64,000 nt of DNA from Scyliorhinus canicula (GCF_902713615.1 NC_052158.1:35889729-35953728); one strand, 5' to 3'; positions 1,714 to 21,150 are shown, counted from the first letter of the stretch. Program-made: numbers and translations. Notes: generated by a model not told the origin, from the sequence alone.

Positions 1714-2487
1714 AGGAAAACTAGATGAATAACAATTCTGTAACTGAATCAATAGTCAATTTTCCAAATTTGGATACGAGTTTCAGGATCAAGAATGTGT
1801 AAGATTCTTGTCACATTTAGGATAGAGGATCCATAAGCTCTCATGGACAGTTCAGACGGCTGTTGAGATCTTTATCCGAATTAGATTTCCTGAATCTTGT
1901 TGGATATTTGACCAGTTCCTTTCTCTGTCTCTAAACGCATGCTGATGTCGAATCCAACGTCTCAGCGAACTCTGCTTGAGCACGTAACTGGTTAGGATTC
2001 ATTTTCTGTCTGGTTATGGAAGCTGATCGCACCGAAATTCTCCACGGATCCTCTTAAATCCGTGTTTCACAGCGTTTAGTTTAAAAGGATAAATATTATT
2101 AAAATTTACAAATAAATACTAATTGCCTGAAACTTCTGTGCCTCCGTGAAACAATTTCATGCGTTCAGGTTCAAGCGCTTGCATCACTGCGTTTGAAGTG
2201 AAGACAGTGAATTGTGTTTTTTTTCAAAAATATGATCATCACAAAGTTCCATGCTTCGTATTTAAATTTCAATATGGTTTACGGTCGAAAAGAATCCTGC
2301 TGAAATTAGTGTTAAAGTAAACACGACCCTGGAAAATCTGTCTTTTCAAAGTAACAAAACTAATGCGAATCGTTGTGCAATGTTCGTGTCCACTGCGGGT
2401 TCTCTCAGGTACAAATGAGACCCTATTGTGAAAGCAGAACACTTGAGTTTGTAGAATACGAACACAGAACTTCGCTTCCCTCAGGAC

Positions 2488-2557
2488 ATGGGACAGCCGG
2501 TGATCAGTCAGATTGTAAACATTTACTACCCAATTCTTGCAATAGTTGGTGTTCTTG
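2488..2557 (+). pseudogene. GPCR copy 1, exon 1 (intact exon of a truncated gene)
   Basis: MGQPVISQIVNIYYPILAIVGVL plus 1 nt, donor GTAGGC at 2558. The upstream ~480 bp aligns with 17668-18154. Confidence 0.8.
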
Positions 2558-2570
2558 GTAGGCGGCTTAT

Positions 2571-2745
2571 AAGAACATAAGGACTAGGAGCAGGAGTAGG
2601 CCATCTGGCCCCTCGAGCCTGCTCCGCCATTCAATGAGATCATTGCTGATCTTTTGTGGACTCAGCTCCACTTTCCGGCCCGAACACCATAACCCTTAAT
2701 CCCTTTATTCTTCAAAAAACAATCTATCTTTACCTTAAAATTTTT
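2571..2745 (-). mobile_element. Short CR1 3'-tail insertion, copy-1 intron only
   Basis: ataagaacataag tail. Copy 2 has the empty site cttataatcag. Confidence 0.7.
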
Positions 2746-3164
2746 AAAATCAGTTAATATTCATCGTTTATTATTTTAAACCATGTTACTGCTCCACCTG
2801 TCCGTGGTACGTTCCGTTTACTTTGATCTGGTTGCTGTATAGACAACAATTTCCAGCGTTACTCAAACAACAGGAATTTCCACCTTTCTGAATTATTCTT
2901 AATGTAACGGTGCAATTCATTCTGAATTTTGAAAACAATCCGATTTTATTTCCTTTGTTAAAGACATTTCAATTTTCAGTAAGAAAACATAGCGGATCTG
3001 GAAATGTGAAATTAGACTGTAAAATTTTGGAAGCCCTCAGAGTGTCAGGAATCATCTGCAGATATAATGGTAAATATATTTTCAGCGGAGGGCGTGTTCT
3101 TTTTAATGAAATGTGATCGACCTGAAACATTAATTCTGCTTCATTCCTCACACCTGCTGAATAT

Positions 3165-4090
3165 GCAATGATAGATGTGAAAGCCCAGGATTGGTTTGCC
3201 AGTCAGTAAGGAGCAGTAAAGTTGCAGATGACATAAAGATTGGCCGGGTGGTTAACAGTGAGGGTGAGTTACAGGAACATATAAGTGGGATAGTCGAATG
3301 GGCGGATACGTGGCAGATGGAATTTCGCCCTGAAAAGTGTGAAAAGTAATTTGACAAGGAAGTGTACTATGTAAGGTCTGACACTGGGAGGTTCCAAAGA
3401 GCTAAGAGACATTGGTGTGTTTGTCCATCGATGTCTGAAGGCAGAGGGGCAGGTTAATGAGGCAGTGAAAAAGGCATATGGTACACTTGCCTTTATCAAT
3501 CGGGGCATAGATTGCAAAAGCAAGGAGGTCATGATGTAGCTGATTAGACGTTTGTTGAGGCCACGGCTGAGGAACTGTGTGCAATTCTGGTCGCCACATC
3601 ATAGGAAAGGGGTGCAGAGAAGATTCACCAGAATGTTGCCTGGGGTGGAACATTTCAGTTATAAAGAGAGGTTGGATAGGTTTGAGTTGTTTTCTCTGCA
3701 GCAGAGAAGACTGAAGGGTGACCTGGTTGAGGTATACAAGATTATGATGGACATATACATGATGGCTAGGGAACAGCTCTTCCCCTTAGTTGAAGGGCCA
3801 GTTACGAGGGGATGTAAATTCAAAGTGAGGGGTGGGAGGTTTAGGATGGATTTGTGGAAAAACGTTTAGACAGAGAATGGTGACAGTCATGAATGCAACT
3901 GTTTGGGTGGGTGGTAGAGGCAGGGTGTCTCACATCATTTAAAATGTACTTGGATGAGTACTTGGCACGTCATAACATTCATGGCTATGGCCAAGTGCTG
4001 GCAAGTGGGATTAGATGGGCAGGTCAGGACCGTTCATGCGTTGGTGCAAACTCGATGGGCCGAAGTGTCTTTTCTGCATTCTGGTATTAC
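3165..4090 (+). mobile_element. CR1 3' fragment in the copy-1 intron, orthologous to 18635-19520
   Basis: FADDIKI…CVQFWSPH…RRLKGDLVEVYK. Same junction sequence (gcaatgatagat) in both introns. Confidence 0.85.
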
Positions 4091-4820
4091 AAAGAACAAA
4101 ACAGCACAGGAACAGGCCCTTTGGCCCTACCGGTCCTGACACCAACCTTTGCCAAAATCCTCAGCAAATCAGGGGCTGGTTTACCACACTGGGCTAAATC
4201 TCTGGCTTTTAAAGCAGACCAAGGCAGGCCAGCAGCACGGTTCAATTCCTGTATCAGCCTCCCCAAACATGCGCCGGAATGTGGCGACTAGGGGCTTTTC
4301 ACAGTAACTTCATTGAAGCCTACTCGTGACAATAAGCTATTTTCATTTAATTTCATTACATCGTTGTGTCGTCTCCCTCTATACCCATCCTATCCTTATT
4401 TTTGTCACAACGTCTTTTGAACACCGTTAATGTATCTGCTTCCACAGCATCCCCTGGCAATGTGTACCAGGCACTCAGCACCCTCTGCGTAAAAAAAACT
4501 GCCTCGCACCTCTCCTCTGATCTTAAACCTATGCCCTCCACCCTGGGAAAAAGTGCATGCCCATCCTCTCTATCATGCCCCTCATAATCTTGTTGAAGTC
4601 TATCAGGTCATCCCTCAACCTCCATCTTTCTAAAGAAAACTGTCCGAGTGTATTCGGCCTCTCCACATAGCTAGCACCCTTCAGACCAGGCAAAATCCTG
4701 GTAAACCTCCTCTGCTCCCTCTCCAAAGCCTCCCCATCCTTCTGGTAGTGTGGCGACCAGAATTGTGTACAATATTCCAAGGGCGGCCTTACCAAGATTC
4801 TATGTAATTGTAACATGACT
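4090..4820 (-). mobile_element. CR1 3' fragment with nested SINE (4171-4356, +), copy-1 intron only
   Basis: RPPLEYCTQFWSPHY…LRDDLI. The SINE has a tRNA-like head and a (TTTCA)n tail. Confidence 0.8.
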
Positions 4821-5545
4821 TTTTTAAAACTCATTTTATATTCAGTGAATCTGTGAATTCTGTTTCTGTCCGTATTATCTGGAGTTCTTTATTTAAAGTA
4901 TATCTGCTTGCGCAGTTCCCCCGGTTGCTGGACACGAGTCAGTCACGTATTTTCCAAGAAACATTTTGTTCTTCCCATCAACGTGAACTCGCTCACACAT
5001 ACCTGTTTGGAATTAATTGCCACTTCCAAGTCCGATCTGTAAGTTTATTAAAGCCTTTGTTTATTTCTGGGCGGTCGTTTTAGAATTCCATTGCTAACTT
5101 GTCTTTTGATTTTCCAGATATTGAACTTATTTTCAGATTAGTGAGTCCAGATTGGTTTGCAAGTGTGAAACAACATCATTGTTAGACAGATTCTTGTCAA
5201 ATTTAACAGGTTTTACCCTACCCATTGCAAGCAACAAAATTGCCTCAGCACATTCATGTTTAAACCTTACTCCACATCAGACTCGCAATGCTATACAACG
5301 GGAAATGTTGACCTCGCAAACGTTTAGGAGACTGTAACGTTAGGCTCCGTGTTGTTAGCGATATATTTAAGGTTCCCATGGTGGGGCCTAAAGTCTACTT
5401 TCCACAAGATGTCATTGTATTCAGATGTTCCAGAGCACCTTGACCCGAATATAAATCGTGCAGAATCATTGGAAGAACGAAAATGTCGACTGCTCCTTCT
5501 CCTAATATAAAGAAAATTGTCAATTTGATTCTCGCTTCTTTGCAG

Positions 5546-5647
5546 CCAACCTGGTGACAATTGCGATTCTCTCCCGCGGGCGTTGCGAGCTCTCCATATG
5601 CATCACCCGATACCTGGTGGCCATGGCAGCGGCGGATTTGTCTTTCC
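5546..5647 (+). pseudogene. GPCR copy 1, exon 2, truncated after TM2
   Basis: Canonical acceptor ttgcAG at 5544-5545, then ANLVTIAILSRGRCELSICITRYLVAMAAADLSF, nearly identical to copy 2. Similarity stops at ~5647. Confidence 0.85.
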
Positions 5648-6050: not shown

Positions 6051-6675
6051 TCAACCACCCAGGTTACAAAGGCATCTAAGGCATTCATATGGCTTCATCT
6101 AATTATACTACATTGAAAATATAACATGAATTTACATTAAACCCTATATTAGTTTTTATTTATAATCTATTACTTACAGGCCAGTTATTTCAGTGAAAGA
6201 GTATGCTGACGGAAGTACTAAATAAACACAATCATTTTCTCATGGCGAATTAAGCTAACCCACCGAATTAGAATTGTTTTGGCTTTGAAAGAAATTTAAA
6301 ACCGTCGTAAACTTCGCACAAACTCAGACATTAATGCGCAAGCCGTGTAGTTAAGTGCTGCAAGCAGCAAAAAAGAAATGCAAGCTGCACCCACAGCAGA
6401 ATATTAAATTGGAATGTTCCAACGACTGCGCCTTATAAAATTATGTCATCAGAATGGGACGTCCATTGACTTCATGGTTTTGAAAGCAGATTTTATTCTC
6501 CACAGATAACGGCGTCATATACTCATAGTTGCCACGTGCGATCAATAATGAGATTAATTGCATTATATAAATCCATTCTTTTCCAATCAATATACCTTGG
6601 CTGTATAAGTAAATATTTCTTTTCAATATAATGGTTTGGCGTCTAATTTTTTTCCCAGCCAACGGCTCAGACAAA

Positions 6676-6868
6676 GTGTTTCTGAAATCCCGGAAAAGAG
6701 TGGGGATCGCTCCCACCTTCGAATTATAATCGGATCAGTGATCATGGCACTGGTTGTTATATTCGGAATAATTGGAATAATCATGGAAAAGACATCAGAG
6801 AGGTAAGGATCAGAGAGAGGGGGATGTAGAACTGAGGGGACAGAGTGAGTGTGGGGCAATCCCCAGTC
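6676..6868 (+). pseudogene. Inverted second copy of the TM exon plus start of its intron
   Basis: Aligns with the reverse complement of ~7989-8180. Encodes LRIIIGSVIMALVVIFGIIGII/WKRHQR with donor at 6803 and the same frameshift. Confidence 0.7.
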
Positions 6869-7105
6869 CACAGTTCGACGTTTCATCTTGCATGGAGTTA
6901 GAAAATGTCATCACGGACAATTAAACATTGACACTCTACTAATTATCCAACATGGGCAAGAAATTTCGGCGTTATATTTTCCCTTCATATTTGAATTCCT
7001 GCAATGTCAAAGGGAAATTAGACGAATTACAATTCTGTCACTGAATCAAGAGTCGAATTTCCAAATGTGGATACGAGTTTCAGCATCAAGAATGTGGAGG
7101 ATTCT

Positions 7106-7292
7106 GAAAATGAAATGAAAATCGCTTATTGTCACGAGTAGGCTTCAATAAAGTTACTGTGAAAAGCCCCTAGCCGCCACATTCCTCCCCTTTTCGGGGA
7201 GGCTGTTACGGGAATCGAACCATGCTGCTGGCTTGCCTTGGTCTGCTTTCAAAGCCTGCGATCTAGCCCAGTGAGCTAAAGAGCCCCTGCTA
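7106..7292 (-). mobile_element. tRNA-derived SINE with 6-bp TSD gattct
   Basis: TSD at 7100-7105 and 7293-7298; empty site at ~1800 in unit 1. Same family at 4171-4356, ~23107-23290 and ~36480-36650. Confidence 0.85.
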
Positions 7293-7395
7293 GATTCTTG
7301 TCAGGTTCAGGCAGTAGGATCCATAAGCTCTCATGGACAGTTCGAACGGCTGCTGAGATCTTTATCCGAATTAGTTTTCCTAAATCCTACTGCAT

Positions 7396-7720
7396 ATAGA
7401 ACATAGAACAGTACAGCACAGAATAGGCCCTTCGGCCCTCGATGTTGTGCCGAGCCATGATCACCCTACTCAAACCCACGTATCCAATCTACAACCCCCC
7501 ACCTTACTTTTTAGGACACTACGGGCAATTTAGCATGGCCAATCCACCTAACCCGCACATCTTTGGACTGTGGGAGGAAACCGGAGCACCTGGAGAAAAC
7601 GCACGCACACACGGGGAGGACGTGCAGACTCCACACAGACAGTGACCCAGCCGGGAATCGAACCAGGGACCCTGGAGCTGTGAAGCATTTATGCTAACCA
7701 CCATGCTACCGTGCTGCCCC
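7396..7720 (-). mobile_element. HE1/V-SINE-type SINE
   Basis: ggggcagcacggtagc head, ggtttcctcccacagtccaaagatg V-domain and CR1-like gttctatgttct tail. Confidence 0.85.
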
Positions 7721-7890
7721 TTATCTGGCCATAATCTGGTAATAAAATTGGCGCACGCCACGATTTCGGCATCGGAACCAATCATCTGCCCAATCACGCT
7801 TCCAGATTATGTTGTAGGCCGATGGAGAATCCCACCGATGGTTTTAGATGTGTATCTGTGTTTGGTAATTAAATCAGTTTATTCAACATC

Positions 7891-8044
7891 GTGTCCTGTA
7901 CTCCCAGTACTGGAGATTCTCCACACTCACTCTATCCCCTCAGTTCTACATTCCCCTCTCTCTCTCCTCTCAGTGTCCTGTACTCCCAGTACTGGAGATT
8001 CCCCATACTCACTCTGTCCCCTCAGTTCTACATTCCCCTCTCTC
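7891..8044. repeat. Two-copy tandem repeat, 82-bp period, in the intron after the TM exon
   Basis: gtgtcctgtactcccagtactggagatt starts at 7891 and at 7973. Confidence 0.85.
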
Positions 8045-8054
8045 TGATCCTTAC

Positions 8055-8170
8055 CTCTCTGATGTATTTTCCATGATTATTCCAATTAGTCCGAATATAA
8101 CAGCCAGTGCCATGATCACTGATCCGATTATAATTCGAAGGTGGAAGCGATCCCCACTTTTCCGGGATTT
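8055..8170 (-). pseudogene. Type I transmembrane exon, probably of the same MHC class I gene
   Basis: LRIIIGSVIMALAVIFGLIGII, a frameshift, then WKIHQR and phase-1 donor G|GTAAGG. Same strand as the alpha-3 exon and ~4.7 kb downstream of it. The acceptor could not be defined. Confidence 0.6.
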
Positions 8171-9222
8171 CAGAAACACATTTGAATAATATGAGGGTTG
8201 TCTCTCTGTTCCCGGATCCATTCCCAGGTCTGTGTTAATTGGGGACAATTTGAACTGAAGCCGCCCATTGGGAATTGATGGGACTGGTTGAAACGTTGGT
8301 TTTACACTCGCCCGATTTCACTTTCCAGTGAAGTCAGTAAAAATTCCCATGGTGGGGGTGTAAAAGCCATGTTGTCCCAATCCCGTGGTTTACCTTCCCG
8401 GCCAGTTCAGTTCTAATTCTCCCCAATGTCTCTTGTCCTGTCCTTGCTCAGTCTCCAGGGTAACATTATATGGCCCAGGATGCAGCATCACTGATGGTTT
8501 TCACATCAAACTTCAAAGAGATGAGGAATAAACTGACCACAGGAAACTGGGCTGAGCTGAAAATGAGGAAAACGACAGATAAACAGAGCAAACGCTTGAA
8601 AAGAAGTACTTGGTACAACCCAACAGCAGAACTTAGTCCTGAACGACCGCAGTGAAACCACTATTGTCAACACATGGAATAAGTGAGAGAACCCAGCTCA
8701 AAGAAAAGGCTTCACAAATGTCCAGAGATTGAGTTCCTGACACATAGACAAGAGTCAGCTGATCAAAGAGAGACAGGATGGATCTGTGATGGGGAGCTCT
8801 TGTCTGACTAACGCATTGAATTTGATGAGGATCTCACTAACATGTTGGATAAGGGAGTGTCTATAGATCTGCTCCAGATGGACTCCAGAGGTCATTTATA
8901 AGGTTCAGCAAAAGATTCTTGACAATAATCAGCGTGTTTGGAATTGGAGGCAATCTGTGGCACAGGGTGGGAATTGGTTGGTGTTATGAAACAGGGAATG
9001 GGGTGAAAGGGAATGTGCTCCTATGGCAGGATGGGATCAGTTGTATTCCCCTGGGATCACTACTGGGCCCTCAGCTTTTCACCATCTATATTAGTGACTT
9101 GGATGAAGGGACAGAGAGTTGTATATCGCAGTTTACAGATGGCAATAAGTTAGGAGATACAGTGAAGGGACATTGGCAGATTAAATGAGTGAATGTCATT
9201 TGCCACAGTTTCCCCCAATGTT

Positions 9223-9812
9223 AGAACATAGAATTTATAGTGCAGAAGGAGGCTATTCGGCCCATCGAGCCTGCACCAGCTCTTGGGAAGAGCACCCCCC
9301 CCCCCCCCCCCCCCCCAGTAACCCAGCAACCCCACGCAACCCCGTTGGACACTAAGGGCAATTTACCGTGGCCAATCCACCTAACCTACATGTCTTTGGA
9401 CTGTGGGAGGAAACCGGAGCACCTGGAGGAAGCCCACACAGGCACGAGGAGAACGTGCAGACTCTGCAAAGACAGTGACCCAAGCCGGGATTCGAACCTG
9501 AGACCCAGGCGCTGTGAAGCAACAATGCTAACCACTATGCTGTCGTGCCGCCCTGCCTCCACAGCCTTCTGCGGCAAAGAATTCCACAGATTCATCACTC
9601 TCTGGCTGAAGAAATTCCTCATCTCTGTTTTAAAGGAACGTCCCTTTAGTCTGAGATTGTCTCTGCATCTAGTTTTTCCTACAAGTGGAAACATCCGCTC
9701 CACATCCACTCTATTCAGGCCTTGCAATATCCTGTAAGTTTCAATAAGATACCCCCTCATCCTTCTAAACTCCAACGACTACAGACCCAGAGTTCTCAAC
9801 CGTTCCTCATAG
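9223..9812 (-). mobile_element. V-SINE (9223-9553) adjoining a CR1 3' fragment (9554-9812)
   Basis: SINE core, plus EFRRMRGYLIETYRIL…FFSQRVMNLWNSLP. Confidence 0.8.
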
Positions 9813-10725
9813 GTTAGTCTGGTTAGTCTTCATTTCTTTCAACACAATGATCTTGGCTTTTTCTGCCTACTCAGTCAGAATTAATTTTTTTCTTTGTTTG
9901 GAGCAGTTCGACATGGGTTTTCAGTTGTTGACTCGCGAAGCAGGCTTTTCAGACCTCAATCTAAACAGCAATTTCAGATCAATGCACCATTTAATTTTTT
10001 TTCAGGTTTTGTGTTATACAGGAATTTTAAATCTTTGCTTCACTGGCTGACACTGACACTGTATTCAAGCTGGACTTCCACGGGATTCTACGGAGTCTTC
10101 TGCAGGATGTGAGATTTAATTTCTGCCTTCAACTTCCAAATCTTTCTTTGGAGCTGTTCTCTGGTGATTTCCTTCTGTGCTTCACTTCTTGAGATTTCCA
10201 GGTCAGAATACTACTTTGATTTTTTTCCTTCAGCTTTCCAGATCTTTAATTTTCTTCTGCAGCCTGTGCATGTTTTAAGTTGTTTCGGTCGCTGGCACCA
10301 TGTTTGAAAGGTAATAATCTTTATTGTCACAAGTAGGCTTACATTAACACTGCAATGAAGTTACTGTGAAAAACCTCTAGTCGCTACACTCTGGCGGCTG
10401 TTTGGGTACACAGAGGGATAATTCAGAATGCCGAATTCATCTAACAAGCACGTCTTTCGGGACCTGTGGGAGGAAACCCGAGCAACCGGAGGAAACCATT
10501 GCAAACATAGGCAGAACACACAGACTCAGCACAGATAGTGGCCAAGCCGGGAATCGAATCTGGGACCCTGCACAGTTCGGTAGATTTGAAGGTATTTGTG
10601 GTCTCAGATAGTTCAAATGTAGAAACTATATACATAGGTAGAGTAAAAGGTCCATTCTAGGAGCAATCTCCATGCCTACTTCTACACACTGCTCTATCTA
10701 AAACTACACTGACACCTCGGTGTGG

Positions 10726-10943
10726 GTCACCAGTTCCCTTGCATCACGACGCAAGGAGTACTGCACTCAATCCTATGTGCCAGGCCATTATACACAGGGA
10801 GTACTATACTCAATCCTACACATTATACTACACAAACCTCTCCACCTCTCTCCTCATTATACACGCTCCCTGTATATAATGGACTGGCACATAGGATTGA
10901 GTACAGTACTCCCTGCGGAGTGATGCAAGGGAACAAGTGTGAC
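10726..10943. repeat. Fold-back element with ~76-bp inverted arms
   Basis: Arm 10726-10801 matches the reverse complement of 10866-10943; the core 38 bp has 2 mismatches. Confidence 0.8.
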
Positions 10944-11248
10944 TTAATGTGGGAAGTGTGGGATCATCCACTTTAAAACTGAGAAGAACAAATCAGAATA
11001 ATTTCACGATGTTGGGAGACTAGGAGCTGGAAAACAAACAAAGATATTTGAGTGACCATGTGCACAAATCACTAAAATCTCGTTCATCGAAATAAAAAAA
11101 AATCAGAAAGACTACTGGGCTGTTGCCCTTTATCTACAGGGGATTGAATAGAAAGTGAGGAAATGATCCTTCAGTAGTACTGAGCTTTGGTCATACTCCA
11201 TCGGGAGAACTACATTTAGTTCTGGACACCACACCTCACAGAAGATAT

Positions 11249-11390
11249 GCTGGATTCTCCGCTGTCGGGGTTCTCCGTTGCGCTGGTAGACCAGGGATTT
11301 CCCGACGGCGTGGGACTGCCCAAAATGGGAAACCCCATTGGCCGGCTGCCGAGACGGAGAATGCCGGGGGTGCAACGGAGAATCCCGCCC
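11249..11390. mobile_element. Short MITE of the same TIR family, inside a CR1 fragment
   Basis: gctggattctccg … cggagaatcccgccc. Confidence 0.55.
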
Positions 11391-11721
11391 AATAAAGTGT
11401 CCTTGGAGAGGGCACAGCGTAGATTCAGCAGAATGATCACACAGCTCAGAGGGTTCAGTTCTGAGGGCAGGTTATATAAAGCTGACAGTATTTCCTTGTG
11501 TTTAACAGAGTGAAGGATGATTTGATCCAGATGTTTAAAATGGTAAAGGGATTCGATAGCGCCGATACAGAGAAACTATTTTCTCTGGTGGTGGAATCTG
11601 GAACAAGAGAGCATCATCTTCAAATTAGAGTGAGGACATTGATGAGTGAAATCCGGAAGCAATTCCTCACAAAAAGGGCAATGGAAATCTGGTACTTTCT
11701 CCACCAAAAGGCTGTGGGATC

Positions 11722-12569
11722 TATAGCCATCTGGGATGGCCACTTACAACGTAAACATCGATACTTGCAAAGACTCAAGGGAAATATGGCCAATACAGGA
11801 TTCAGGCAAACTCAGAGCCTGAATGTATATTTGCTGACAGAGAACCAGACAGTATCGAAACCTCTAACCGATTTGCATTCTAATGACCCATTTCCCCAGG
11901 ACAAGTGACTGGTACTCAGGTATCAGATACATTTCCAGACACAACGGCGCAAATCCCTTTACCCAGGAAGCCCAGCCATTGAGGCACCTGTCCTTTTACT
12001 AGCTCAAATCGAAGGCAGTAATCAAAGCCGGACGAATTATTGGGTCCAAAGCTAAGGACCGCCCAAAAGAACGTGAAACCCCAAAGGATAAAGAGTGACA
12101 CTGCAATGTGTTCGAACTCTTTTGGCCCTGGCACACTGGTACTCTTCGGCCCGGCCTATACCTGAAACCAGCTGCAGCACCACGACCAGAAGCAAGTTCA
12201 AGATCAATGATTGCTACCAGACGGATGAGCCAGCAGAAACAAAGTTACTTCTCCAGACCCAGCCACTCCAGATCCCAACAAAGGCCTTGTTCCTCTGCCA
12301 AAGCCGGGTGCCTGAAAGTTAAGTACATGTTGTTGTATTGTTAGGTGTAGTTTAGCTTGTAGCGTTTTTATGTTGCATGTGTGAGTTCATCTTGTGTGTA
12401 AATAAACCATTATTGAACTTGAATTAACTGACTGATTGTTGGGTTTTTGATCAATGTCCGGTTGAACCTTGTGGTGGTATCATCAGATACCTGGCGACTC
12501 TGAAAAGCAATATTACTCTATATTAAGAAGGGAAACATTATTAGCGCCTCCAGTGCAGAATTGGCAACA
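11722..12569 (+). mobile_element. Related solo LTR (right end uncertain)
   Basis: Starts t(a)tagccatctgggatggcc and shares acaaaggccttgttcc and cctggcgactc with the LTR at 39718. No clean TSD. Confidence 0.55.
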
Positions 12570-12821
12570 GCTATTAGTGACGCTAGTGGATAGTATTCCA
12601 TTCATCAAAATCGGCAACAGATCTGGGGGTAAACGTACATGTTCCAGTCTGAGATGGAGCCTGTTTTATAAGGTCAGTGCAGCGAGAAATATGGAGCAAC
12701 AGTGGATAAATGGAGCTGAGGGACAGATCAGTCAGGATGTGAATGAATGAAGGAACAGAGTCAAGGGGCTGAATGGCCTCATCCTGTCACACATACATAT
12801 ATATCCAGCACAGTTCCTTAC

Positions 12822-13099
12822 GCCACTGATGGAGCTTGGGCTCTGCCAGACTGCTGTGTTCAATTTGACAGGAGTATTGATCCTCATCCCCAGCACTTAT
12901 TTCAATCTGTTTCTGGATCTGATGGCACCCATCGTGGTTCGGTCGAAATCCCGAGGATAGTGTCTCAGACAGTATCTCTCCATTCCTTAGCCAGGTCATC
13001 TCGATGTCTCCATGATAAAACCCAGTAACCAGGCAGGAGAGAGGGAGCATTTGTACTTTCTATTGGGCCCTGTTCTGGAGATGATGACTTCAGCCTGGA
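12822..13099 (-). pseudogene. MHC class I (non-classical-like) alpha-3 Ig-C1 exon
   Basis: Acceptor cattacAG, then xQAEVIISRTGPNRKY, a frameshift, then LSCLVTGFYHGDIEMTWLRNGE…RPNHDGCHQIQKQIEISAGDEDQYSCQIEHSSLAEPKLHQW and phase-1 donor C|GTAAGG. Both Ig cysteines, the Trp and the CxIEHxSL motif are present. Length 278 nt (279-1) fits a single-base deletion. Confidence 0.85.
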
Positions 13100-13549
13100 C
13101 TGTAATGGGAATGGATGAAAACACAAACAATAGATAGAGACTGAATGTAATGGGAAAACGGTTTGATAGATCAGTGAAGTTAGATCAGAACATGGATCAA
13201 AACTGAAATCAATACCTTTCCGTTCAAAATATTCCTTTCCAATTCGAAAACATCCTTTTATATTTTAAGCGGATACTTCTTCCAAACACCATTTCCAATA
13301 CTTGGTCCAGGATTTTTCAGAATCCCATTTCTCTTTAGCCTTCACTGAAAAGTGATTGGATGCGACCCATCTCATTCTGCACGGTTCTAAACTAATATAG
13401 TCCTTTCATTCAAATCAAAGCGGCATTGATCCTCCACGGAGCCGTCTTCAGTGATCTCAATCAGCTTCATCCATTGAAAAGTGTGAATACCTGTCAGAGA
13501 GCCAATAGGGATCAATAATCACATTCACAGTCTGATCATGGGACTTTTG

Positions 13550-16500
13550 GACTGTGGCCTTACCAAGGTTTTGTACAGCTGCATCATCACCTCACGGCTC
13601 TTAAATTCAATCCCGCTGCTAATGAACGCTAGCACACCACAGGCCTTCTTCACAGCTCTATCCATTGAGTGGCAACTTTCAAAGATCTATGAACATAGAC
13701 CCCAAGATCTCTCTGCTCCTCTACATTGCCAAGAACCCTACCGTTAACCCTGTATTCCGTATTAATATTTGTCCTTCCAAAATTGACAACCTCACACTTT
13801 TCAGGGTTAAACACTATCTGCCACTTCTCAGCCCAGCTCTACATCCTATCTATGTCTCTTTGCAGCCGACAACAGCCCTCCTCACTATCCACAACTCTAC
13901 GAATCTTCGTATCATCTGAAAATTTACTGACCCACCCTTCAACTTCCTCATCGAAGTCATTAATGAAAATCACAAACAGCAGAGGACCCAGAACTGACAC
14001 CTGCGGTACGCCACTGGTAATTAGGCTCCTGGCTGAATATTTGCCATCCACCACCACCCTCTGACTTCTATCGGTTAGCCAGTTTGTTATCCAACTGGCC
14101 AAATTTCCCACTATCGCATGCCTCCTTACTTTCTGCATAAGCCTACCATGGGGAACCTTATAAAATGCCTTACTAAAATCCATGTACACTACATCCACTG
14201 CTTTACCTTCATTCACATGTTTGGTCACCTCCTCAAAGAAGTCAATAAGACTTGTAAGGCAAGACGTATCCCTCACAAATCCGTGCTGACTATCCCTAAT
14301 CAAGCAGTGTCTTTTCAGGTGCTCAGAAACCCTATCCCTCAGTACCCTTTCCATTACTTTGCCTACCACCGAAGTAAGACTAACCGGCCTGTAATTCCCA
14401 GGGTTATCCCTATTCCCCTTTTTGAACAGGGGCACGACATTCGCCACTCTCCAATCCCCTGGTACCACCCCTGTTGACAGTGAGGACGAAAAGATCATTG
14501 CCATCGGCTCTGCAATTTCATTTCTTGCTTCCCGTAGAATCCTTGGATATATCCCGTCAGGCCCGGGGGGCTTGTCTATCCTCAAGTTTTTCAAAACGCC
14601 TAACACATCTTCCTTCCTAACCAGTATCTCCTCGAGCTTACCATTCTGTTTCACACTGCCCTCTCCAACAATATGGCCCCTCTTGTTTGTAAATACTGAA
14701 GAAAAGCACTCGTTCAAGACCTCTCCTATCTCTTCAGACTCAATACACAATCTCCCGCTACTGTCCTTGATCAGACCTACCCTCGCTCTAGTCATTCTCA
14801 TATTTCTCACATATATGTAAAAGGCCTTGGGGGTTCCCTTGATCCTACCCGCCAAAGATTTTTCATGCCCTCTCTTAGCTCTCCTAATCCCTTTCTTCAA
14901 TTCCCTCCTGGCTATCTTGTATCCCTCCAGCACCCTGCCTGAACCTTGTTTCCTCAGCCTTACATAAGTCTCCTTCTTCCTCTTAACAAGACATTCAACC
15001 TCTCTTGTCAACCATGGTTCCCTCATTCGACCATCTCTTCCCTGCCTGACAGGGACATACATATCAAAGACACGCAGTACCTGTTCCTTGTACAACTTCC
15101 ACATTTCACTTGTGTCCTTCCCTGACAGCCTTTGTTCCCAACTTATGCACTTCAATTCTTGTCTGACAGCATTGTATGTACCCTTCCCCAATTGTAAACC
15201 TTGCCCTGTTGCACGCACCTATCCCTCTCCATTACTAAAGTGAAAGTCACAGAATTGTGGTCACTACCTCCAAAATGCTCACCCACTAACAAATCTATTA
15301 CGTGCCCTGGTTCATTACCAAGTACCAAATCCAATTTGGCCTCCCCTCTGGTCGGACAATCTACATACTGTGTTAGAAAAGCTTCCTGGACACACTGCAC
15401 AAACACCACCCTATCTAAACTATTTGATCTAAAGAGTTTCCACTCAATGTTTGGGAAGTTAAAGTCACCCATGACTACTACCCTGTGACTTCTGCACCTT
15501 TCCAAAATCTGTTTCCCAATCTGCTCCTCCACATCCCTGCTGCTATTTGGGGGGGGGGGGGGGGCTATAGAAAACTCCCAACAAGGTGACTGCTCCTTTC
15601 CAATTTCTGACTTCAACCCATACTACCTCAGCAGTTAAATCCTCCTCGAACTGCCTTTCTGCAGCTGTTATAATATCTCTAATTAACAATGCCACCCCAC
15701 CTCTTTTACCATCCTCCCTAATCTTTTTGAAACATCTATAACCAGGGACCTCCAACAACCATTTCTGCCCCCTTCTATCCAAGTTTCCATGATGGCCACC
15801 ACATCGTAGTCCCAAGTACCGATCCATGCCTTACGTTCACCCACCGTATTCCTGATGCTTCTTGCGTTGAAGTATGCACACTTCAACCCATCTCCTTGCC
15901 TGCAAGTACTCTCCTTTGTCAGTGTTACCTTCCCCACTGTGTCACTACATGCTTTGGCGTCCTGAATATCGGCTTCTTTAGTTGCTGGACTACAAATCAG
16001 GTTTCCATTCGCCTGCCAAATTAGTTTAAACCCTTCCGAAGACTACTAGAAAACTTCCCTCCCAGGATAGTGTTGCCCCTCTGGTTCAGATGCAACCCGT
16101 TCTGCTTGTACAGGTCCCAACTTCCCCAGAATGCACTCCAATTATCCAAATACCTGAAGCCCTTCCTTCTACACCATTCCTGCAGCCACATGTTCAACTG
16201 CACTCTCTCCCTATTCCTAGCCTCGCTATCACGTGGCACTGGCAACAAACCAGAGATGACAACTCTGTCTGTCCTGGCCTTTAACTTCCAGTCTAACTCC
16301 CTAAACTTGTTTATTACCTCCACACCCCTTTTCCTACATACGTGGTTGGTACCAATGTGCACCACGACTTCTGGCTGCTCACCCTCCCCCTTCAGGATCC
16401 TGAAGACACGACCCGAGACATCCCTGGCCCTGGCACCCAGGAGGCAACATGCCATCCAGGAGTCTCGCTCGCGACCACAAAATCTCCTATCTATTCCCAT

Positions 16501-16990
16501 AATCATAGAATCTCCTATTACTATTGCTTTTCTATTCTACCCCCCTTCCCTTCTGAGCCCCAGAGCCAGACTCAGTGCCAGAGACCTGGCTGCTAGGGCC
16601 TTCCCCCGGTAGGTCATCCCACCCAACATCATCCATGTTTTGAAGGGAAGCGGCCACGAGGGATCCCTGCACTGTCTGCCTGTTCGTTTTCTTTCCCCTG
16701 ACTGTAACCCAGCTACTCTTGTCCAGTACCTTGGGTGTGGCTACCTCCCTGTAACTCTACTCGATAACCACCTCTGCCTCCCGGATGATCCGAAGTTCAC
16801 CCAGCTCCAGGTCCAGTTCCCTAACATGGTCTCTGAGGAGGTGGAATTGGGTGCACTTCCCGTAGGTATAGTCAGCGGGGACACCGGTGGTCACCCTCAC
16901 CACTCACATCCTACAGGAGGAGCCCTAACCTCCACCCCCTCTTACTTTATAGAATATAACTGCCCCGTAGACCAACTGGACATCCGCCCT
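13550..16990 (-). mobile_element. CR1-clade LINE with ORF1 (zinc finger + SGNH esterase) and ORF2 (EN-RT), degenerate
   Basis: GNYRPVSLTS…QHGF…YMDFSKAF…GVPQ.SVLGP…FSDDT; EN GDFNFP and GGSDHN; ORF1 VVVHIGTN…GLHLN. Confidence 0.92.
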
Positions 16991-18154
16991 CCGACTCTGC
17001 TTCTAGTCAGCTGCACTCCCACAGTCCAAAGATGTGCAGGTTGGATGGATTGGCCATGATAAATTGCCCTTAGTGTCCAAAATTCTATGATCTATGATTA
17101 ACCTAGGACAAAAGTTCGCACAACATCATGGGCCGAAGGGCCTGTTCTGTGCTGTATTTTTCTATGTTCTATAGGGAAGTGTTTTATTATCAGGGGCTGG
17201 ATTTTAGGATGGTGGAGTTTCCTTTCCTGACATCTGAAGAGTCAGCAGGGAACACATCGCCATCCAGGCTTCCTGTTCTGCAGCCACTTCACACGGCAAA
17301 GAGCATTTACTGGCTGGAGGCGGGATTGCTGGCCTCCCTTGGGAGGATGTCCACCTCAGAGAGCTGGTGGCCAGTCCCTGGACCCTGCAGCGCGAGAGGC
17401 TGCAGTGGACAGGACTGGGACTGCAAGCAGGCCCCATGGCCTCAGTCCTAGGAGTCCAAGACCTGGGACATCTTGGGGGTCTGAGGATTGGTCGAGGAGG
17501 TGTTGCTCAGGTGGTAGGTTAGGGGATATGGGCGTGGATGATTGTAGAGAAGACAGAGAGGGATGGAGGAGGATCTGCACGGACCAGACTTTCTGGGAGG
17601 TGCCTGATGTTAAAAGGAGACTGCTGATTGAATCCCCACCCCCTCACCCCCCAGCACTCACCCCCCCATTTTCTGTCTAGTTGTGGAAGCTGATTGTACA
17701 TAAATGCTCCATGGAACCTCTTAAATCAGTGTTTCATAGCGTTTAGTTTAAAAGGTAAATGCTATAAAATGTTAGAAACAAATGCAACTTGTCCGAAATG
17801 TGAACTTTTCTGCCTCCTTGAAACTATTTCTTATGTTCAGGTTCAAGTGCTTGTATCACTGTGTTTGGAGTGAACACCGTGAATTGTGTTTCTTTTCAAA
17901 AATATAATCATCACGAAGATTCATACTTCGTATTTAATTTCAATATGTTTTAATGTCGAAAAGAATCCTACTGACTTTAGTGTTAGGAGTAAACACAGCC
18001 CTGGATAATCTGTTTTTTTAAAGAAACTAACGCGAATCGTTGTGCAATGTTCATGTCCCTTGTGGTTTCTCTGACGGATAAATGAGGTCCTACTGTGAAA
18101 GCAGAACACTTGCGTTTGTAGAATACGAACACAGAACTTCGCTTCTCTCAGAAT

Positions 18155-18224
18155 ATGGGACAGCCCGTGATCATTCTGATTGAAAATATTTACTACCCTA
18201 CTCTTGCAATAGTTGGTGTTCCTG
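18155..18224 (+). CDS. GPR139/GPR142-like class A GPCR, copy 2, coding exon 1
   Basis: ATG at 18155 encodes MGQPVIILIENIYYPTLAIVGVP plus 1 nt, then donor GTAAGC at 18225. It joins in phase 1 to 20219 (G+CT = Ala), completing TM1 (…VGVPANLVTIAIL). Confidence 0.85.
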
Positions 18225-18634
18225 GTAAGCAGCTTATAATCAGCTAATATTCATCGTGTGTTATTTTTAACTTGTTTACTGCTTCTCCTATCCGCGATAC
18301 ATTCTGTTTAGTTTAATCGGGTTGCTGTGCAGACAACCGTTTCCATCGTTAATCAACTTACAAGAATTTCCACTTTCTGAATTTTTCTTAATGTAACGGT
18401 GCAATTCATTCTGAATTTTGAAAGCAAGCCGATTTAATTTCCTTTATTAAAGGCATTTGAATTTTTAGGAAGAAAACGTAGCGAAATGTGAAATTAGACT
18501 AAAATTTTAGAAGCCCTTAGAAGGTCAGCAAGCATCTGCAGATCGAATAGAAAATATATTTTCAGCGAAGGTCGGGTTTTTTAATGCGATTGACTTGAAA
18601 CATTAATTCATTCCTCACGATGCTGAATATGCAA

Positions 18635-19520
18635 TGATAGATATGAAAGCCAAGGATCCGTTTGCTTATCAGTAAGGATCCAAACGTTTGCAGACGACAT
18701 AAAGATTTGCCGGGTGGTTAACAGTGAGGGTGAGTAGCAGGTTGAAATAGACGGGATGGTCAAATGGGCGGATAAATGGCAGATGCAATTTAACCCTGAA
18801 CAGTGTGAGGTGATACACTTTGGAAGCAGTAATTTAACCAGGACGTTTACTATGAAAGGCCAGACACTGGGAAGTTCCGAAGAACTAAGGGATGTTGGCG
18901 TGTTCGTCCTTAGATCGCTGAAGGCAGAGAGGCAGGTTAATAGGGTGGTTTACAGGCCTTTGTCAATCGGGCATAGATTATAAAAGTAAGGAGGTCATGT
19001 TGGAGTTGTATAGAAACGTTGGTGAGACTACAGCTGTGTGCAATTCTGGTCGCCACATTATAGGAAGGATGTACTGAAGGAGGTGCAGAGAAGATTCATC
19101 AGGATATTGCCTGGAATGGAAGATTTAAGTTATAAAGAGAGGTTGGAAAGGCTTGGGTAGTTTTCACTGCAGCAGGGAAGACTCATGGGTCGTCTGACTG
19201 GATTATTGTCCCTTAACTTGAAATGCCAGTTATGAGGGGACACAAGTTCGAAGTGAGGGGTGGGAGGTTTAGGGGGGATTTGAGGAAAAACGTTTTTACC
19301 CAGAGAGTGGTGACGTCTGGAATGCACTGCCTGGGAAGATGGTAGAGGCGGAATGCCTCACATCATCTAAAATGTACCTGGATGAGGACTTCGGGCGCCA
19401 TAACATTCAAGGCTATTGCCACGTGCTGGCAGTTGGGATTAGATGGGCACGTGGAAGGCCATTAATGCGTCTTTGCAGACTATGAGCCAAAGGGCCTCTC
19501 CTGCACTCTGGCATTCTGTG
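18635..19520 (+). mobile_element. CR1 3' fragment in the copy-2 intron
   Basis: WADKWQMQFNPEQCEVIHFG; collinear with 3165-4090. Confidence 0.85.
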
Positions 19521-20218
19521 AATCGATGATTCTGTTCCTGTCCCTATTATCTGGAGTGGCTTATTTAATGTATATCTGCTTGCTCTTTTTCACCTGTTCC
19601 TGAACACTTCAATCATCTATTTTCCAAGAAGCATTTTGTTCTTCCCATCAACGTGCATTCGCTCACATATAGCTGTTTGGGATTAGTTGCCATTTCTAGC
19701 GACGATCTGTATGTTTATTAAAACGTTTATCTATTTCTGGGTCGTCCTTTCAGAATTTAATCACCAATTTGTCATTTGTTTTTCCAGATTTTGACATTAT
19801 TTTCAGATTACTAAGTCCAGATTGTTTTGCAAGTGCGAAAAAACATGTGTGTCAGACAGATTCTTGTCAATTTTAACCAATTTTACCCCACCCATCGCAA
19901 GCAACAAAATTGCGTTAGCATATTCTTGTTTAAACCTGACGCCACATCAGACTCTCAATTCCTTACAGCGGGAGCATGTTGATCTCGCAAACCGTTAGGA
20001 GACTGTAAAGTTAGGCTCCGAAGTGTTGGTTATATATTTAATGTTTGCCTTTGGTGGCACATAAAGCCTACATTCCACAAGATACCGTTGCTTTTCAGAT
20101 GTTCCAGAGCACCTTGAATGGAATGTAAATCGTGCAGAATCATTCGAAGAACGAATATGTCGACTACTCTTTCTCCAATATAACGAAAATTGTCAATTTC
20201 ATTTTCGCTTCTTTGGAG

Positions 20219-21150
20219 CTAACCTGGTGACAATTGCGATTCTAGCCCGTGGACGTTGCGAGCTCTCCATATGCATCACCCGATACCTTGTGGCCATGGC
20301 AGCGGCGGATTTGTCTTTCCTGGTGTTTAATGTGATATTCTTCGAGATTAATGATTCCCATTTCCCATATTCGTTCCTCAGCTATACACCAATTTGCCGT
20401 CTTATTCTTTCTCTGGACCTTGCTTCCATTAACTGTTCTGTTTGGTTAACTGTTGCCTTCACTTTCGATCGATTTGTTTCAATATGCTGTCGGAAGCTGC
20501 GTGCAAATTATTGCACGGCGAAATCAGCAACTGTGGCGATATCAGTGATGTGTTCTTTAGCAATATTACAGAGCCTCCCAATATATTTCGTATATGAACA
20601 TCGTGAACTAATTGACAACGTGCCATGGTTCTGTACTGTAAAAGAAAGTTGCTACACCTCGCCCATATGGATAGCATATTGGTGGCTGGAAACTATGTTA
20701 ACACCCGTTCTTCCATTTATTTCGATATTGTTGTCAAACATCCTGACCATCAGGCACATTGTTCAGGCTAATAGAGTGAGAAGGGGACTCAGAGGTAACA
20801 ACAATGATCAGAATCACAAAGATCCAGAGGTCGAGAACCGCAGAAAATCAATGGTTTTGTTGCTCGCAATTTCTGGCAGTTTTATAATCTTATGGTTTGT
20901 AAATTTCGTAACTTACATTTATGTGCATTTTTCAGATGTTCAGCTTGTACAAACACATTTCAACGATCCATTCACCATTCTGGAACAGTCAGGCTATATG
21001 CTCATGACTTTGAGTTGCTGCGTAAACACGTTTATTTATGGAGTTTCCCAGCGCAAATTCAGAGCTGAGGTTAGGAATCTGTTTATGCGTCCCGTGGAGC
21101 TCATAATGCATTCATGGAAGCATGTTTCTGTACTTCGATGTATTAAATAG
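20219..21150 (+). CDS. GPR139/GPR142-like class A GPCR, copy 2, coding exon 2 (333 aa with exon 1)
   Basis: Uninterrupted ORF with TM2 AMAAADL, TM3 FTFDRFVSIC, TM5 LTPVLPF, ICL3/TM6 ENRRKSMVLLLAISGSF and TM7 SCCVNTFIYGVSQRKFR. These motifs are typical of the GPR139/142-like clade. The acceptor is ttggAG at 20217-20218. Confidence 0.9.

What the first reader, a model, noticed from the sequence alone, without database searches (positions are those of the whole stretch)
7395..17668. A 10.3-kb block carrying MHC class I alpha-3 and TM exons is lodged in the upstream region of a GPCR tandem unit
Seen: the unit-2 upstream sequence aligns with unit 1 up to ~7395 (ttcctaaatc vs 1890) and resumes at ~17668 (ttttctgtct(a/g)gtt vs 2003). 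About 110 bp of unit-1 sequence is missing at the junction and there is no TSD. The block holds a minus-strand Ig-C1 exon with intact phase-1 splice sites (12822-13099) and, 4.7 kb downstream, a phase-1 TM exon (8055-8170). No alpha-1/alpha-2 exons are visible. Established: alpha-3 then TM with phase-1 introns is MHC class I architecture. Inference: a piece of a non-classical class I locus was copied into the GPCR array, implying physical linkage or ectopic exchange between an MHC class I lineage and this receptor cluster.
Basis: partly seen in the sequence, partly recalled or inferred. Interest (0 to 1): 0.75.

Follow-up and report, generated by a model that had tools for sequence, protein, structure and literature searches.

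The report
Decayed shark MHC class I gene fragment
This is a dead, transposon-riddled piece (alpha-2, alpha-3 and membrane exons) of a multicopy shark non-classical MHC class I gene. It lies next to a GPR139-like receptor gene inside the already mapped catshark MHC, so it is an ordinary relic of gene-family turnover and not a surprising new linkage.

Summary
Unit 2 of the receptor array carries about 10.26 kb (7398-17657) that unit 1 lacks; unit 1 has 92 unrelated bases there, and there is no target-site duplication.

The block holds a minus-strand class I alpha-3 exon and, 4.7 kb downstream, the matching TM exon.

All three exons are dead:
- Alpha-2 has three stops and one frameshift.
- Alpha-3 has one frameshift.
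- The TM exon has lost its acceptor (AG to TG) and has two 2-nt deletions.

Only about a quarter of the block is class I DNA. The rest is transposons, including a young SINE at the left junction and a young inverted LINE.

The closest relatives (82-92% identical, introns included) are at least 11 genes on the same chromosome, 3.4-5.2 Mb away. These are the published catshark MHC-Ib cluster, most likely UEA.

The window lies between slc39a7 and that cluster on chromosome 13. GPR139-like genes are interleaved with class I genes across this region.

The linkage is therefore real but already known. Earlier notes of this scan had already described the same cysteine-less class I family at other loci.

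The most likely origin is a DNA-level copy inserted about 0.5 kb upstream of the receptor gene, which then decayed. Read support for the junctions could not be obtained.

The parts
1711..5647 (+). Unit 1: a partial copy of the receptor unit. It holds the upstream region, exon 1 at 2488-2553, the intron and the first ~100 bp of exon 2 at 5539-5647. It lacks the block.
   Evidence: Self-BLASTN, about 78-88% identity to 7008-7397 plus 17667-20320. tblastn of receptor N-termini.
1908..1999 (+). 92 bp present only in unit 1, at the position of the block
   Evidence: Local alignment to the block scores no better than shuffled sequence.
6639..6878 (+). A ~240-bp patch inserted into the unit-2 left arm. 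It holds an inverted second copy of the decayed TM pseudo-exon (homology 6672-6867).
   Evidence: 94.4% identical to 8184-7991. It shares the TG acceptor and one of the two 2-nt deletions. It is absent from the homologous unit-4 sequence.
7008..7397 (+). Unit-2 left arm up to the left junction. It contains a 184-bp repeat insertion at 7108-7289.
7398..7727 (-). Young SINE. Its 3' tail lies against the left junction (edges within about 2 bp).
   Evidence: 96-99% identical to many copies genome-wide over its 5' 89 bp. Its tail sequence is shared with the LINE tail.
7728..7836 (.). 109 bp of unassigned sequence
   Evidence: No significant match to the paralog loci. In one search only the SINE part of the query matched elsewhere.
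7837..8045 (-). About 2.5 copies of the 82-bp minisatellite. In the paralogs it follows the TM-exon donor as arrays of about 20 copies.
   Evidence: Tandem Repeats Finder. BLASTN to paralogs A, B and C.
8055..8170 (-). TM pseudo-exon. It is the homolog of the paralogs' 120-nt phase-1 exon. The acceptor AG is now TG, and two 2-nt deletions are present.
8171..9221 (-). Class I intron between alpha-3 and TM, proximal part
   Evidence: 89% identical over 1176-1343 bp to the gene at C13:40.52 Mb, and 85-92% to other paralogs.
9226..10570 (.). Repeat insertions in that intron: a SINE-like element at 9226-9553, and others at 9575-9809 and 10298-10570
10946..11076 (-). Class I intron piece
   Evidence: 89% identical to C13:40089648-40089778, which adjoins that paralog's alpha-3-to-TM intron.
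11455..11722 (-). Class I intron piece
   Evidence: 91.9% identical to paralog A, where it is contiguous with the sequence just downstream of alpha-3.
11723..12622 (.). A complete ~900-bp dispersed repeat inserted in the intron
   Evidence: 4301 first-look candidates. Full-length matches at 85-90% identity on many chromosomes.
12822..13099 (-). Alpha-3 (Ig C1-set) pseudo-exon. Both splice sites are intact. One 1-nt deletion lies after codon 'KYK'.
13216..13490 (-). Alpha-2 pseudo-exon, with three in-frame stops and one 1-nt deletion relative to intact paralogs
   Evidence: tblastn E=1.7e-25.
13491..13536 (-). Last recognisable bases of class I intron 2. Homology to the paralogs ends here.
13553..17172 (.). 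Young CR1-type LINE with the inversion topology expected from twin priming. The body is on the minus strand: a GDSL-esterase ORF1 at 16506-16021, and endonuclease plus reverse transcriptase at 15616-13553. The 3' tail is on the plus strand at 17016-17172. 601 bp of the canonical element are missing.
   Evidence: Pfam. 92-99% identical to other copies. Canonical 3' part defined from L045-L048.
17173..17657 (.). Fragment of an old dispersed repeat, ending at the right junction
   Evidence: 318 candidates, with 67-85% identity on many chromosomes.
17658..21150 (+). Unit-2 right arm with the GPR139-like gene. Exon 1 (MGQPVI...) is at 18155-18226 and exon 2 at about 20212-21150. The block ends about 0.5 kb upstream of the ATG.

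Best explanation
This is a non-functional relic. A genomic (unspliced) piece of a multicopy non-classical MHC class I gene, most likely of the UEA lineage, was copied at the DNA level from the class Ib cluster on the same chromosome. The piece ran from the end of intron 2, through alpha-2, alpha-3 and the TM exon, into the minisatellite that follows the TM exon.

It was joined into a break about 0.5 kb upstream of a GPR139-like receptor gene. There is no target duplication, and 92 bp of target were lost, either at insertion or later. It lacks a leader, alpha-1 and the cytoplasmic exons, so it could never encode a class I chain.

It has since decayed by stops, frameshifts and a lost acceptor. 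Later events were:
- A 240-bp inverted patch of its TM pseudo-exon was copied 0.5 kb to the left of the block.
- Several transposons inserted into it, most recently a SINE at the left junction and an inverted CR1-type LINE just upstream of alpha-2.

Shown here: the anatomy, the homology, the decay and the relative ages of the transposons. Inferred: the direction of the event (insertion) and the end-joining or template-switching mechanism.
For: Class I identity and origin:
- Pfam and solved-structure searches identify the alpha-3 exon as class I type.
- The fragment is 82-92% identical in DNA, introns included and in the same order, to at least 11 genes at C13:39.29-41.1 Mb.
- Those loci carry alpha-2 exons that pass the PF00129 cut-off. 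They are marked 'MHC-Ib' in the published catshark chromosome 13 table (PMC10751288).
- In the unrooted tree the window copy attaches inside the cluster's diversity, on the longest branch.

Pseudogene state:
- Searches list the stops, frameshifts and the lost acceptor.

Insertion:
- The only other copy of the flanks in the genome is contiguous.
- The 92 bp that unit 1 has instead do not resemble the block.
- The fragment-to-paralog intron divergence (about 11%) is lower than the unit 1 to unit 2 divergence (about 18%).

Later events:
- The SINE is 96-99% identical to other copies and the LINE 92-99%.
- TM copy A is 94% identical to copy B and shares two of its three defects.
Against: - Polarity rests on a single comparison copy (unit 1). 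Units 3 and 4 do not cover the junction.
- In the alpha-2/alpha-3 part the fragment is 15-18% from every paralog. That is as old as the unit duplication, so the order of the two events is not firmly resolved.
- Midpoint rooting puts the fragment outside the sampled paralogs.
- No donor with matching breakpoints was found.
- Both outer junctions are now occupied by repeats: a young SINE on the left and an old repeat on the right. The original joints therefore cannot be read.
- No read-level check of the assembly was possible.
Confidence: 0.62

Rival explanations
1. In-situ relic. A class I gene of this family already lay here, at the slc39a7 edge of the class Ib region, before the local receptor duplications. 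Its 5' and 3' ends were lost to rearrangements. Unit 1 was either made by a copying event that skipped the class I part or lost it later.
For: - The window lies inside the interval that holds the class Ib genes.
- Another class I-like gene lies only 0.87 Mb away, at 36.82 Mb.
- Receptor and class I genes are interleaved along the region.
- The alpha-2/alpha-3 part is as diverged from the paralogs (15-18%) as unit 1 is from unit 2.
Against: - It requires removal of the whole class I part from unit 1, leaving 92 bp that match nothing in the block.
- The intron part is only 8-11% from the paralogs.
- The ML tree attaches the copy inside the cluster.
Confidence: 0.25
2. Retrotransposon-mediated transfer. 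The class I piece was carried either as a 3' transduction of the adjacent LINE, or as upstream sequence of a read-through RNA that ended in the SINE tail.
For: - The LINE body lies directly upstream of alpha-2 on the same strand.
- The SINE is on the same strand, and its 3' tail sits exactly at the left junction.
- The SINE and LINE share a tail sequence.
Against: - Both elements are far younger than the fragment: 92-99% identity to other copies, against 82-92% for the fragment.
- The LINE stops short of its own 3' end next to alpha-2. Its real tail lies inverted at 17016-17172, so it is a self-contained inverted insertion.
Confidence: 0.04
3. Assembly artefact. The block was joined to the receptor unit by a mis-join at repeats.
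For: Both outer junctions abut repeats. No read evidence could be obtained.
Against: - A second class I-derived patch (6639-6878) is embedded in unique unit sequence outside the block. This shows independently that class I DNA is in this array.
- The right junction is an old, diverged repeat copy joined to unique sequence.
- Two separate DNA samples hold 41-55% of the sampled words of 6600-8400. This shows presence only, not continuity.
Confidence: 0.04

Closest known systems
Shark non-classical MHC class Ib genes of the multicopy cluster between slc39a7 and b2m/brd2 on S. canicula chromosome 13 (UDA/UEA region; Verissimo et al. 2023, PMC10751288). UEA is one of two expanded shark families (PMC12562908).
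   Same: - Same chromosome.
- 82-92% DNA identity, introns included.
- Same exon order and exon boundaries, the same short alpha-2 to alpha-3 intron, and the same 82-bp minisatellite after the TM exon.
- The intact alpha-2 of a paralog lacks both disulfide cysteines.
   Different: - Only alpha-2, alpha-3 and TM are present.
- All three exons are disabled.
- It lies 2.4 Mb outside the first annotated gene of that cluster and 3.4-5.2 Mb from its nearest relatives.
- It is not in the published gene table.
Class I gene fragments and pseudogenes of the human MHC (for example the truncated HLA class I fragments left by block duplications). This comparison is from my own knowledge.
   Same: Partial class I genes with introns retained. 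They lie among unrelated genes in the MHC, decay neutrally, and are filled with retroelements.
   Different: A different lineage and species. Here the neighbours are GPR139-like receptor genes.
MHC-linked olfactory receptor clusters of mammals (from my own knowledge)
   Same: A large rhodopsin-type receptor family interleaved with class I genes in the extended MHC.
   Different: The shark receptors are GPR139-like, not olfactory receptors. Nothing here shows a chemosensory role or any functional tie to class I.

Membership tests
MHC class I heavy-chain gene | Membrane-proximal Ig C1-set alpha-3 domain with the two cysteines and the class I-type motifs | tested here: met
   Pfam C1-set E=2.8e-13. 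The best solved-structure matches are class I alpha-3 and b2m. Motifs CLVTGFY...YSCQIEH are present. One frameshift.
MHC class I heavy-chain gene | Alpha-1 and alpha-2 peptide-binding-type domains (PF00129) | tested here: inconclusive
   An alpha-2 homolog is present. tblastn to a paralog alpha-2 gives E=1.7e-25, and the paralogs' alpha-2 exons pass PF00129. No alpha-1 or leader was found in the window or in 20 kb on either side.
MHC class I heavy-chain gene | Exon order alpha-2, alpha-3, TM, with phase-1 introns | tested here: met
   The exon boundaries coincide with those of the paralogs, which are 120-nt and roughly 276-279-nt phase-1 exons. The TM acceptor in the window has mutated to TG.
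MHC class I heavy-chain gene | Open reading frame able to encode a chain (a functional member) | tested here: not met
   Three stops, one 1-nt deletion in each of alpha-2 and alpha-3, two 2-nt deletions in TM, a lost acceptor, and no alpha-1.
Shark UEA lineage | A multicopy family mapping to the class Ib cluster next to b2m/brd2 | tested here: met
   At least 11 paralogs at 39.29-41.1 Mb. Their coordinates coincide with genes marked MHC-Ib in the published table, with b2m at 41.36 Mb. UEA is the multicopy lineage of that cluster.
Shark UEA lineage | Groups with named UEA reference sequences in a phylogeny | not tested
   No named reference sequences could be fetched. Full-length relatives fall outside the length window of the protein search for single exons.
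Processed pseudogene or retrocopy | Introns removed, poly(A) or LINE-type tail, target-site duplication | tested here: not met
   Introns are retained and colinear with the paralogs. No duplication at the junctions.
LINE 3' transduction | A complete LINE 3' end followed by the carried flank, with both of the same age | tested here: not met
   The LINE lacks canonical positions 1709-2309 next to alpha-2. Its tail is inverted at the far end, and the element is much younger than the fragment.

The most novel reading that the evidence does not exclude
The fragment may mark a former, wider extent of the UEA class Ib cluster, reaching to slc39a7. The shark-specific GPR139-like family (thousands of candidate copies) may since have expanded into that ground. 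The MHC-embedded receptor arrays would then be a shark counterpart of the MHC-linked olfactory receptor clusters of mammals, with repeated exchange between the two families. My data show interleaving and one exchange event, but no functional tie.
Probability: 0.1. Interest if true: 0.5.

Novelty: new member of a known kind. Interest (0 to 1): 0.2.

Why it matters
It adds one unannotated pseudogene fragment to a known shark class Ib family. It shows that this family has shed pieces beyond the annotated cluster, here and on another chromosome (C1:23.58 Mb).

It also documents, at base level, a layered history of this spot. The order given here is inferred from sequence divergence:
1. Receptor unit duplication.
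2. Arrival of the class I fragment.
3. A short inverted copy of the fragment's TM pseudo-exon.
4. Insertion of an inverted CR1-type LINE.
5. Insertion of a SINE.

It does not change the picture of MHC organisation. The linkage it seemed to reveal is already published for this species. The more interesting by-product is the size and MHC-interleaved position of the GPR139-like receptor family, for which I found no open paper.

Tried and rejected
- LINE 3' transduction and SINE-tail read-through transfer. Both were rejected on the ages of the elements and on the LINE's structure.
- The 92 bp of unit 1 as a remnant of the block. No similarity was found on either strand.
- A third copy of the junction to set polarity. 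None exists in the genome.
- A donor with the same LINE/intron-2 junction. None was found; every match stops at the LINE edge.
- Alpha-1, leader or further class I exons in the window and 20 kb on either side. None was found.
- Homology of 7728-7836 and 13500-13552 to the paralogs. Nothing significant was found.
The junction is therefore unverified by reads.
- Further loci from the genome.
- Naming the lineage from named reference proteins. This was not possible with single-exon queries.
Full report
**Where the window lies**

The window is G000:C13:35,889,729-35,953,728 in a 4.22-Gb genome. MHC_I-domain exons (PF00129) were found almost only on this contig, between 32.08 and 64.8 Mb. The exceptions are three degenerate matches with stops on C9 and C1. 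None is in the window.

Their coordinates coincide, gene by gene, with entries marked 'MHC-Ib' in the published gene table for Scyliorhinus canicula chromosome 13 (NC_052158.1; supplement of PMC10751288). Examples are 39,517,788-39,538,521, 39,555,133-39,571,521, 40,129,510-40,149,519 and 40,508,165-40,533,866.

The order in that table is:
- C4 at 30.9 Mb
- a class Ib group at 32.1-32.4 Mb
- col11a2, rxrb, hsd17b8 and slc39a7 (35.61 Mb)
- a gene-less stretch from 35.80 to 36.04 Mb, which contains this window
- class Ib genes from 38.35 to 41.12 Mb
- b2m at 41.36 Mb, brd2 at 41.46 Mb and class II at 42.0-42.3 Mb

[quoted passage not shown] It places one cluster, holding single-copy UDA and multicopy UEA, between brd2/b2m and hsd17b8/rxrb/slc39a7/col11a2. 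The window is therefore inside the already mapped class Ib interval.

**The duplication and the block**

Self-BLASTN and a genome-wide search with unit 1 1700-2570 show two things. Unit 1 1802-1907 matches 7292-7397. Unit 1 2000-5647 matches 17667-20320, and by eye this match starts at 17658. Identity is 78-88%.

No third copy of this junction exists in the genome. In place of the block, unit 1 has 92 bp (1908-1999). These align to the block no better than shuffled sequence. I saw no direct repeat at the two junctions.

Unit 1 is only a stub. It ends 93-108 bp into receptor exon 2.

The receptor genes match the 7tm_1 family. [quoted passage not shown] They have a short first coding exon, at 18155-18226 in unit 2 and 2488-2553 in unit 1. 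The block therefore ends about 0.5 kb upstream of the unit-2 start codon.

**The class I exons**

*Alpha-3.* The exon at 13099-12822 (minus strand) has an AG acceptor and a C|GTAAGG donor. It matches Pfam C1-set (E=2.8e-13). In the solved-structure search its best matches are class I alpha-3 domains and beta-2-microglobulin. It is 278 nt long. Against all paralogs one base is missing after the codons for KYK.

*Alpha-2.* The paralogs have an alpha-2 exon only about 115-130 bp upstream of alpha-3. The window has its homolog at 13490-13216. It carries three in-frame stops and a 1-nt deletion, and tblastn gives E=1.7e-25.

*TM exon.* In the paralogs this is a 120-nt phase-1 exon that ends in a basic WKRQRK stop-transfer motif. 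In the window (8170-8055) three defects are present:
- The acceptor is TG instead of AG.
- Two separate 2-nt deletions shift the frame.
- As a result the hydrophobic stretch reads in an unexpected frame and ends in 'ENTSE'.

No alpha-1, leader or cytoplasmic exon was found in the window or in 20 kb on either side. This is a pseudogene fragment with at least eight disabling changes, so sequencing error is not a sufficient explanation.

**Relatives**

The alpha-3 exon with its flanks is 87-91% identical to 11 loci at C13:39.29-41.1 Mb, and to one fragment on C1.

Homology is colinear and includes the introns:
- 12623-13536 covers alpha-3, intron 3, alpha-2 and about 45 bp of intron 2.
- 11455-11722, 10946-11076 and 8171-9221 are pieces of the intron between alpha-3 and TM.
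- These are followed by the TM exon and by an 82-bp minisatellite (7837-8045). In the paralogs this minisatellite forms arrays of about 20 copies just after the TM donor.

The best match over the intron and TM exon is the gene at 40.52 Mb (89% over 1176-1343 bp). Shorter stretches reach 90-92% with other paralogs.

Over alpha-2/alpha-3 the window copy is 82-85% identical to every paralog, while the paralogs are 85-100% identical to each other. In the unrooted maximum-likelihood tree the window copy attaches inside the cluster (support 0.85) on the longest branch. Midpoint rooting puts it outside.

The intact alpha-2 of a paralog has no cysteine at either disulfide position. Two earlier notes of this scan, on the loci at 39.37 and 39.54 Mb, reached the same observation and suggested UEA. 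I adopt 'most likely UEA' on three grounds: map position, multicopy status, and the statement that UBA and UEA are the two expanded shark families. I did not test this against named reference sequences.

**The rest of the block is transposons**

- *7398-7727: SINE.* It is on the minus strand, with its 3' tail against the left junction. Its 5' 89 bp are 96-99% identical to many copies across the genome, so it is recent.
- *13553-17172: CR1-type LINE.* It has a GDSL-esterase ORF1 and an endonuclease plus reverse-transcriptase ORF2. It is 92-95% identical over 1.7 kb to other copies, and 97-99% over the last 208 bp.
  - Beside alpha-2, the body stops at canonical position 1708, in the middle of the ORF2 motif 'LVRP|HLEYC'.
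  - Canonical positions 2310-2453, the 3' tail, lie at 17016-17172 on the opposite strand, next to the element's 5' end.
  - Positions 1709-2309 are missing.
  - This is the topology expected of a twin-primed insertion, so the LINE is one self-contained, late event.
- *17173-17657: old dispersed repeat.* Identity to other copies is 67-85%.
- *11723-12622: complete ~900-bp dispersed repeat*.
- *9226-10570 and parts of 10571-11454: further repeats*.

About 2.7 kb of the 10.26 kb is class I-derived.

**A second class I-derived patch**

6672-6867 (plus strand) is 94.4% identical to 8184-7991, the TM pseudo-exon with its flanks. Against the homologous unit-4 sequence it is a clean insertion of about 240 bp (6639-6878).

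It shares the TG acceptor and the second 2-nt deletion with copy B, but not the first deletion. It was therefore copied locally from the already decaying fragment. It also shows, independently of the main junctions, that class I DNA sits within this array.

**How it got there**

Introns are retained, so this is not a retrocopy. Transfer by the neighbouring LINE or SINE is rejected because both are much younger than the fragment, and because the LINE has no 3' end next to alpha-2.

That leaves two readings:
- a DNA-level insertion, by end-joining or template switching, of a gene fragment from the cluster;
- an in-situ relic.

The insertion reading is favoured for four reasons:
- The only other copy of the flanks is contiguous.
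- The 92 bp that unit 1 has at that position are unrelated to the block.
- Intron divergence from the nearest paralog (about 8-11%) is below the unit 1 to unit 2 divergence (about 18%).
- The tree attaches the copy within the cluster.

Four points count against certainty:
- Only one comparison copy exists.
- The alpha-2/alpha-3 part is 15-18% diverged from the paralogs, about as much as unit 1 is from unit 2.
- Both junctions are now covered by repeats.
- The tree is unrooted.

I put insertion at about 0.6 and the in-situ relic at about 0.25.

**Linkage**

The whole-genome search with the receptor protein gave 2629 first-look candidates. All 129 that were scored had E<1e-86. Many lie on C13 between 31.5 and 48 Mb, including 32.25, 40.66 and 40.85 Mb, inside the class I groups.

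[quoted passage not shown] Receptor and class I genes are thus interleaved over megabases. A class I fragment beside a receptor gene is what birth-and-death turnover in such a region produces.

**Limits**

The junctions are not verified by reads.
- Two independent DNA samples hold 41-55% of the sampled words of 6600-8400. This shows presence, not continuity.

**Verdict**

The finding is an ordinary, unannotated pseudogene fragment of a known family inside a known region.

Noticed in passing
window 18155-18226(+), 20212-21150(+), 41872-42795(+), 2488-2553(+), 24919-24830(-); genome-wide: The GPR139-like receptor family is very large in this genome. There were 2629 first-look candidates, and all 129 scored had E<1e-86. 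Clusters lie on C13 (interleaved with the MHC), C6, C17 and C20. The genes have a short first coding exon, and a lone first exon lies at 24919-24830. I found no open paper on this expansion. The published annotation table lists no gene at all between 35.80 and 36.04 Mb, although two receptor reading frames here are open.
   Followed up: partly
L013 1339-1668 (G000:C1:23583503-23583898): A fragment of the same class I family lies on a different chromosome. Alpha-2 residues 1-60 are fused directly to alpha-3 residues 37-92, and stops are present. It is a pseudogene piece outside the MHC chromosome, whereas the intact class Ib genes are reported to be confined to the MHC chromosome.
   Followed up: partly
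window 7837-8045; paralog loci L016/L017 and L023: An 82-bp minisatellite begins about 10 bp after the TM-exon splice donor in this class I family. The paralogs carry about 20 copies and the window about 2.5.
   Followed up: no
window 13553-17172: A young CR1-type LINE has the inversion-with-deletion topology of twin priming, a mechanism described for mammalian L1. The body is inverted up to canonical position 1708, the tail (2310-2453) is direct, and 601 bp are lost.
   Followed up: partly
window 6639-6878: A 240-bp inverted patch copied from the decayed TM pseudo-exon lies 0.5 kb left of the block. A shared AATGG at its left edge may be a microhomology. This looks like a templated insertion during repair or replication.
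   Followed up: partly
G000:C13:36823439-36829441: Alpha-1 and alpha-2 exon matches to PF00129 (one TAG in alpha-1) lie inside LOC119975559. That gene is not marked MHC-Ib in the published table. It is the class I-like gene nearest to the window, 0.87 Mb away.
   Followed up: no
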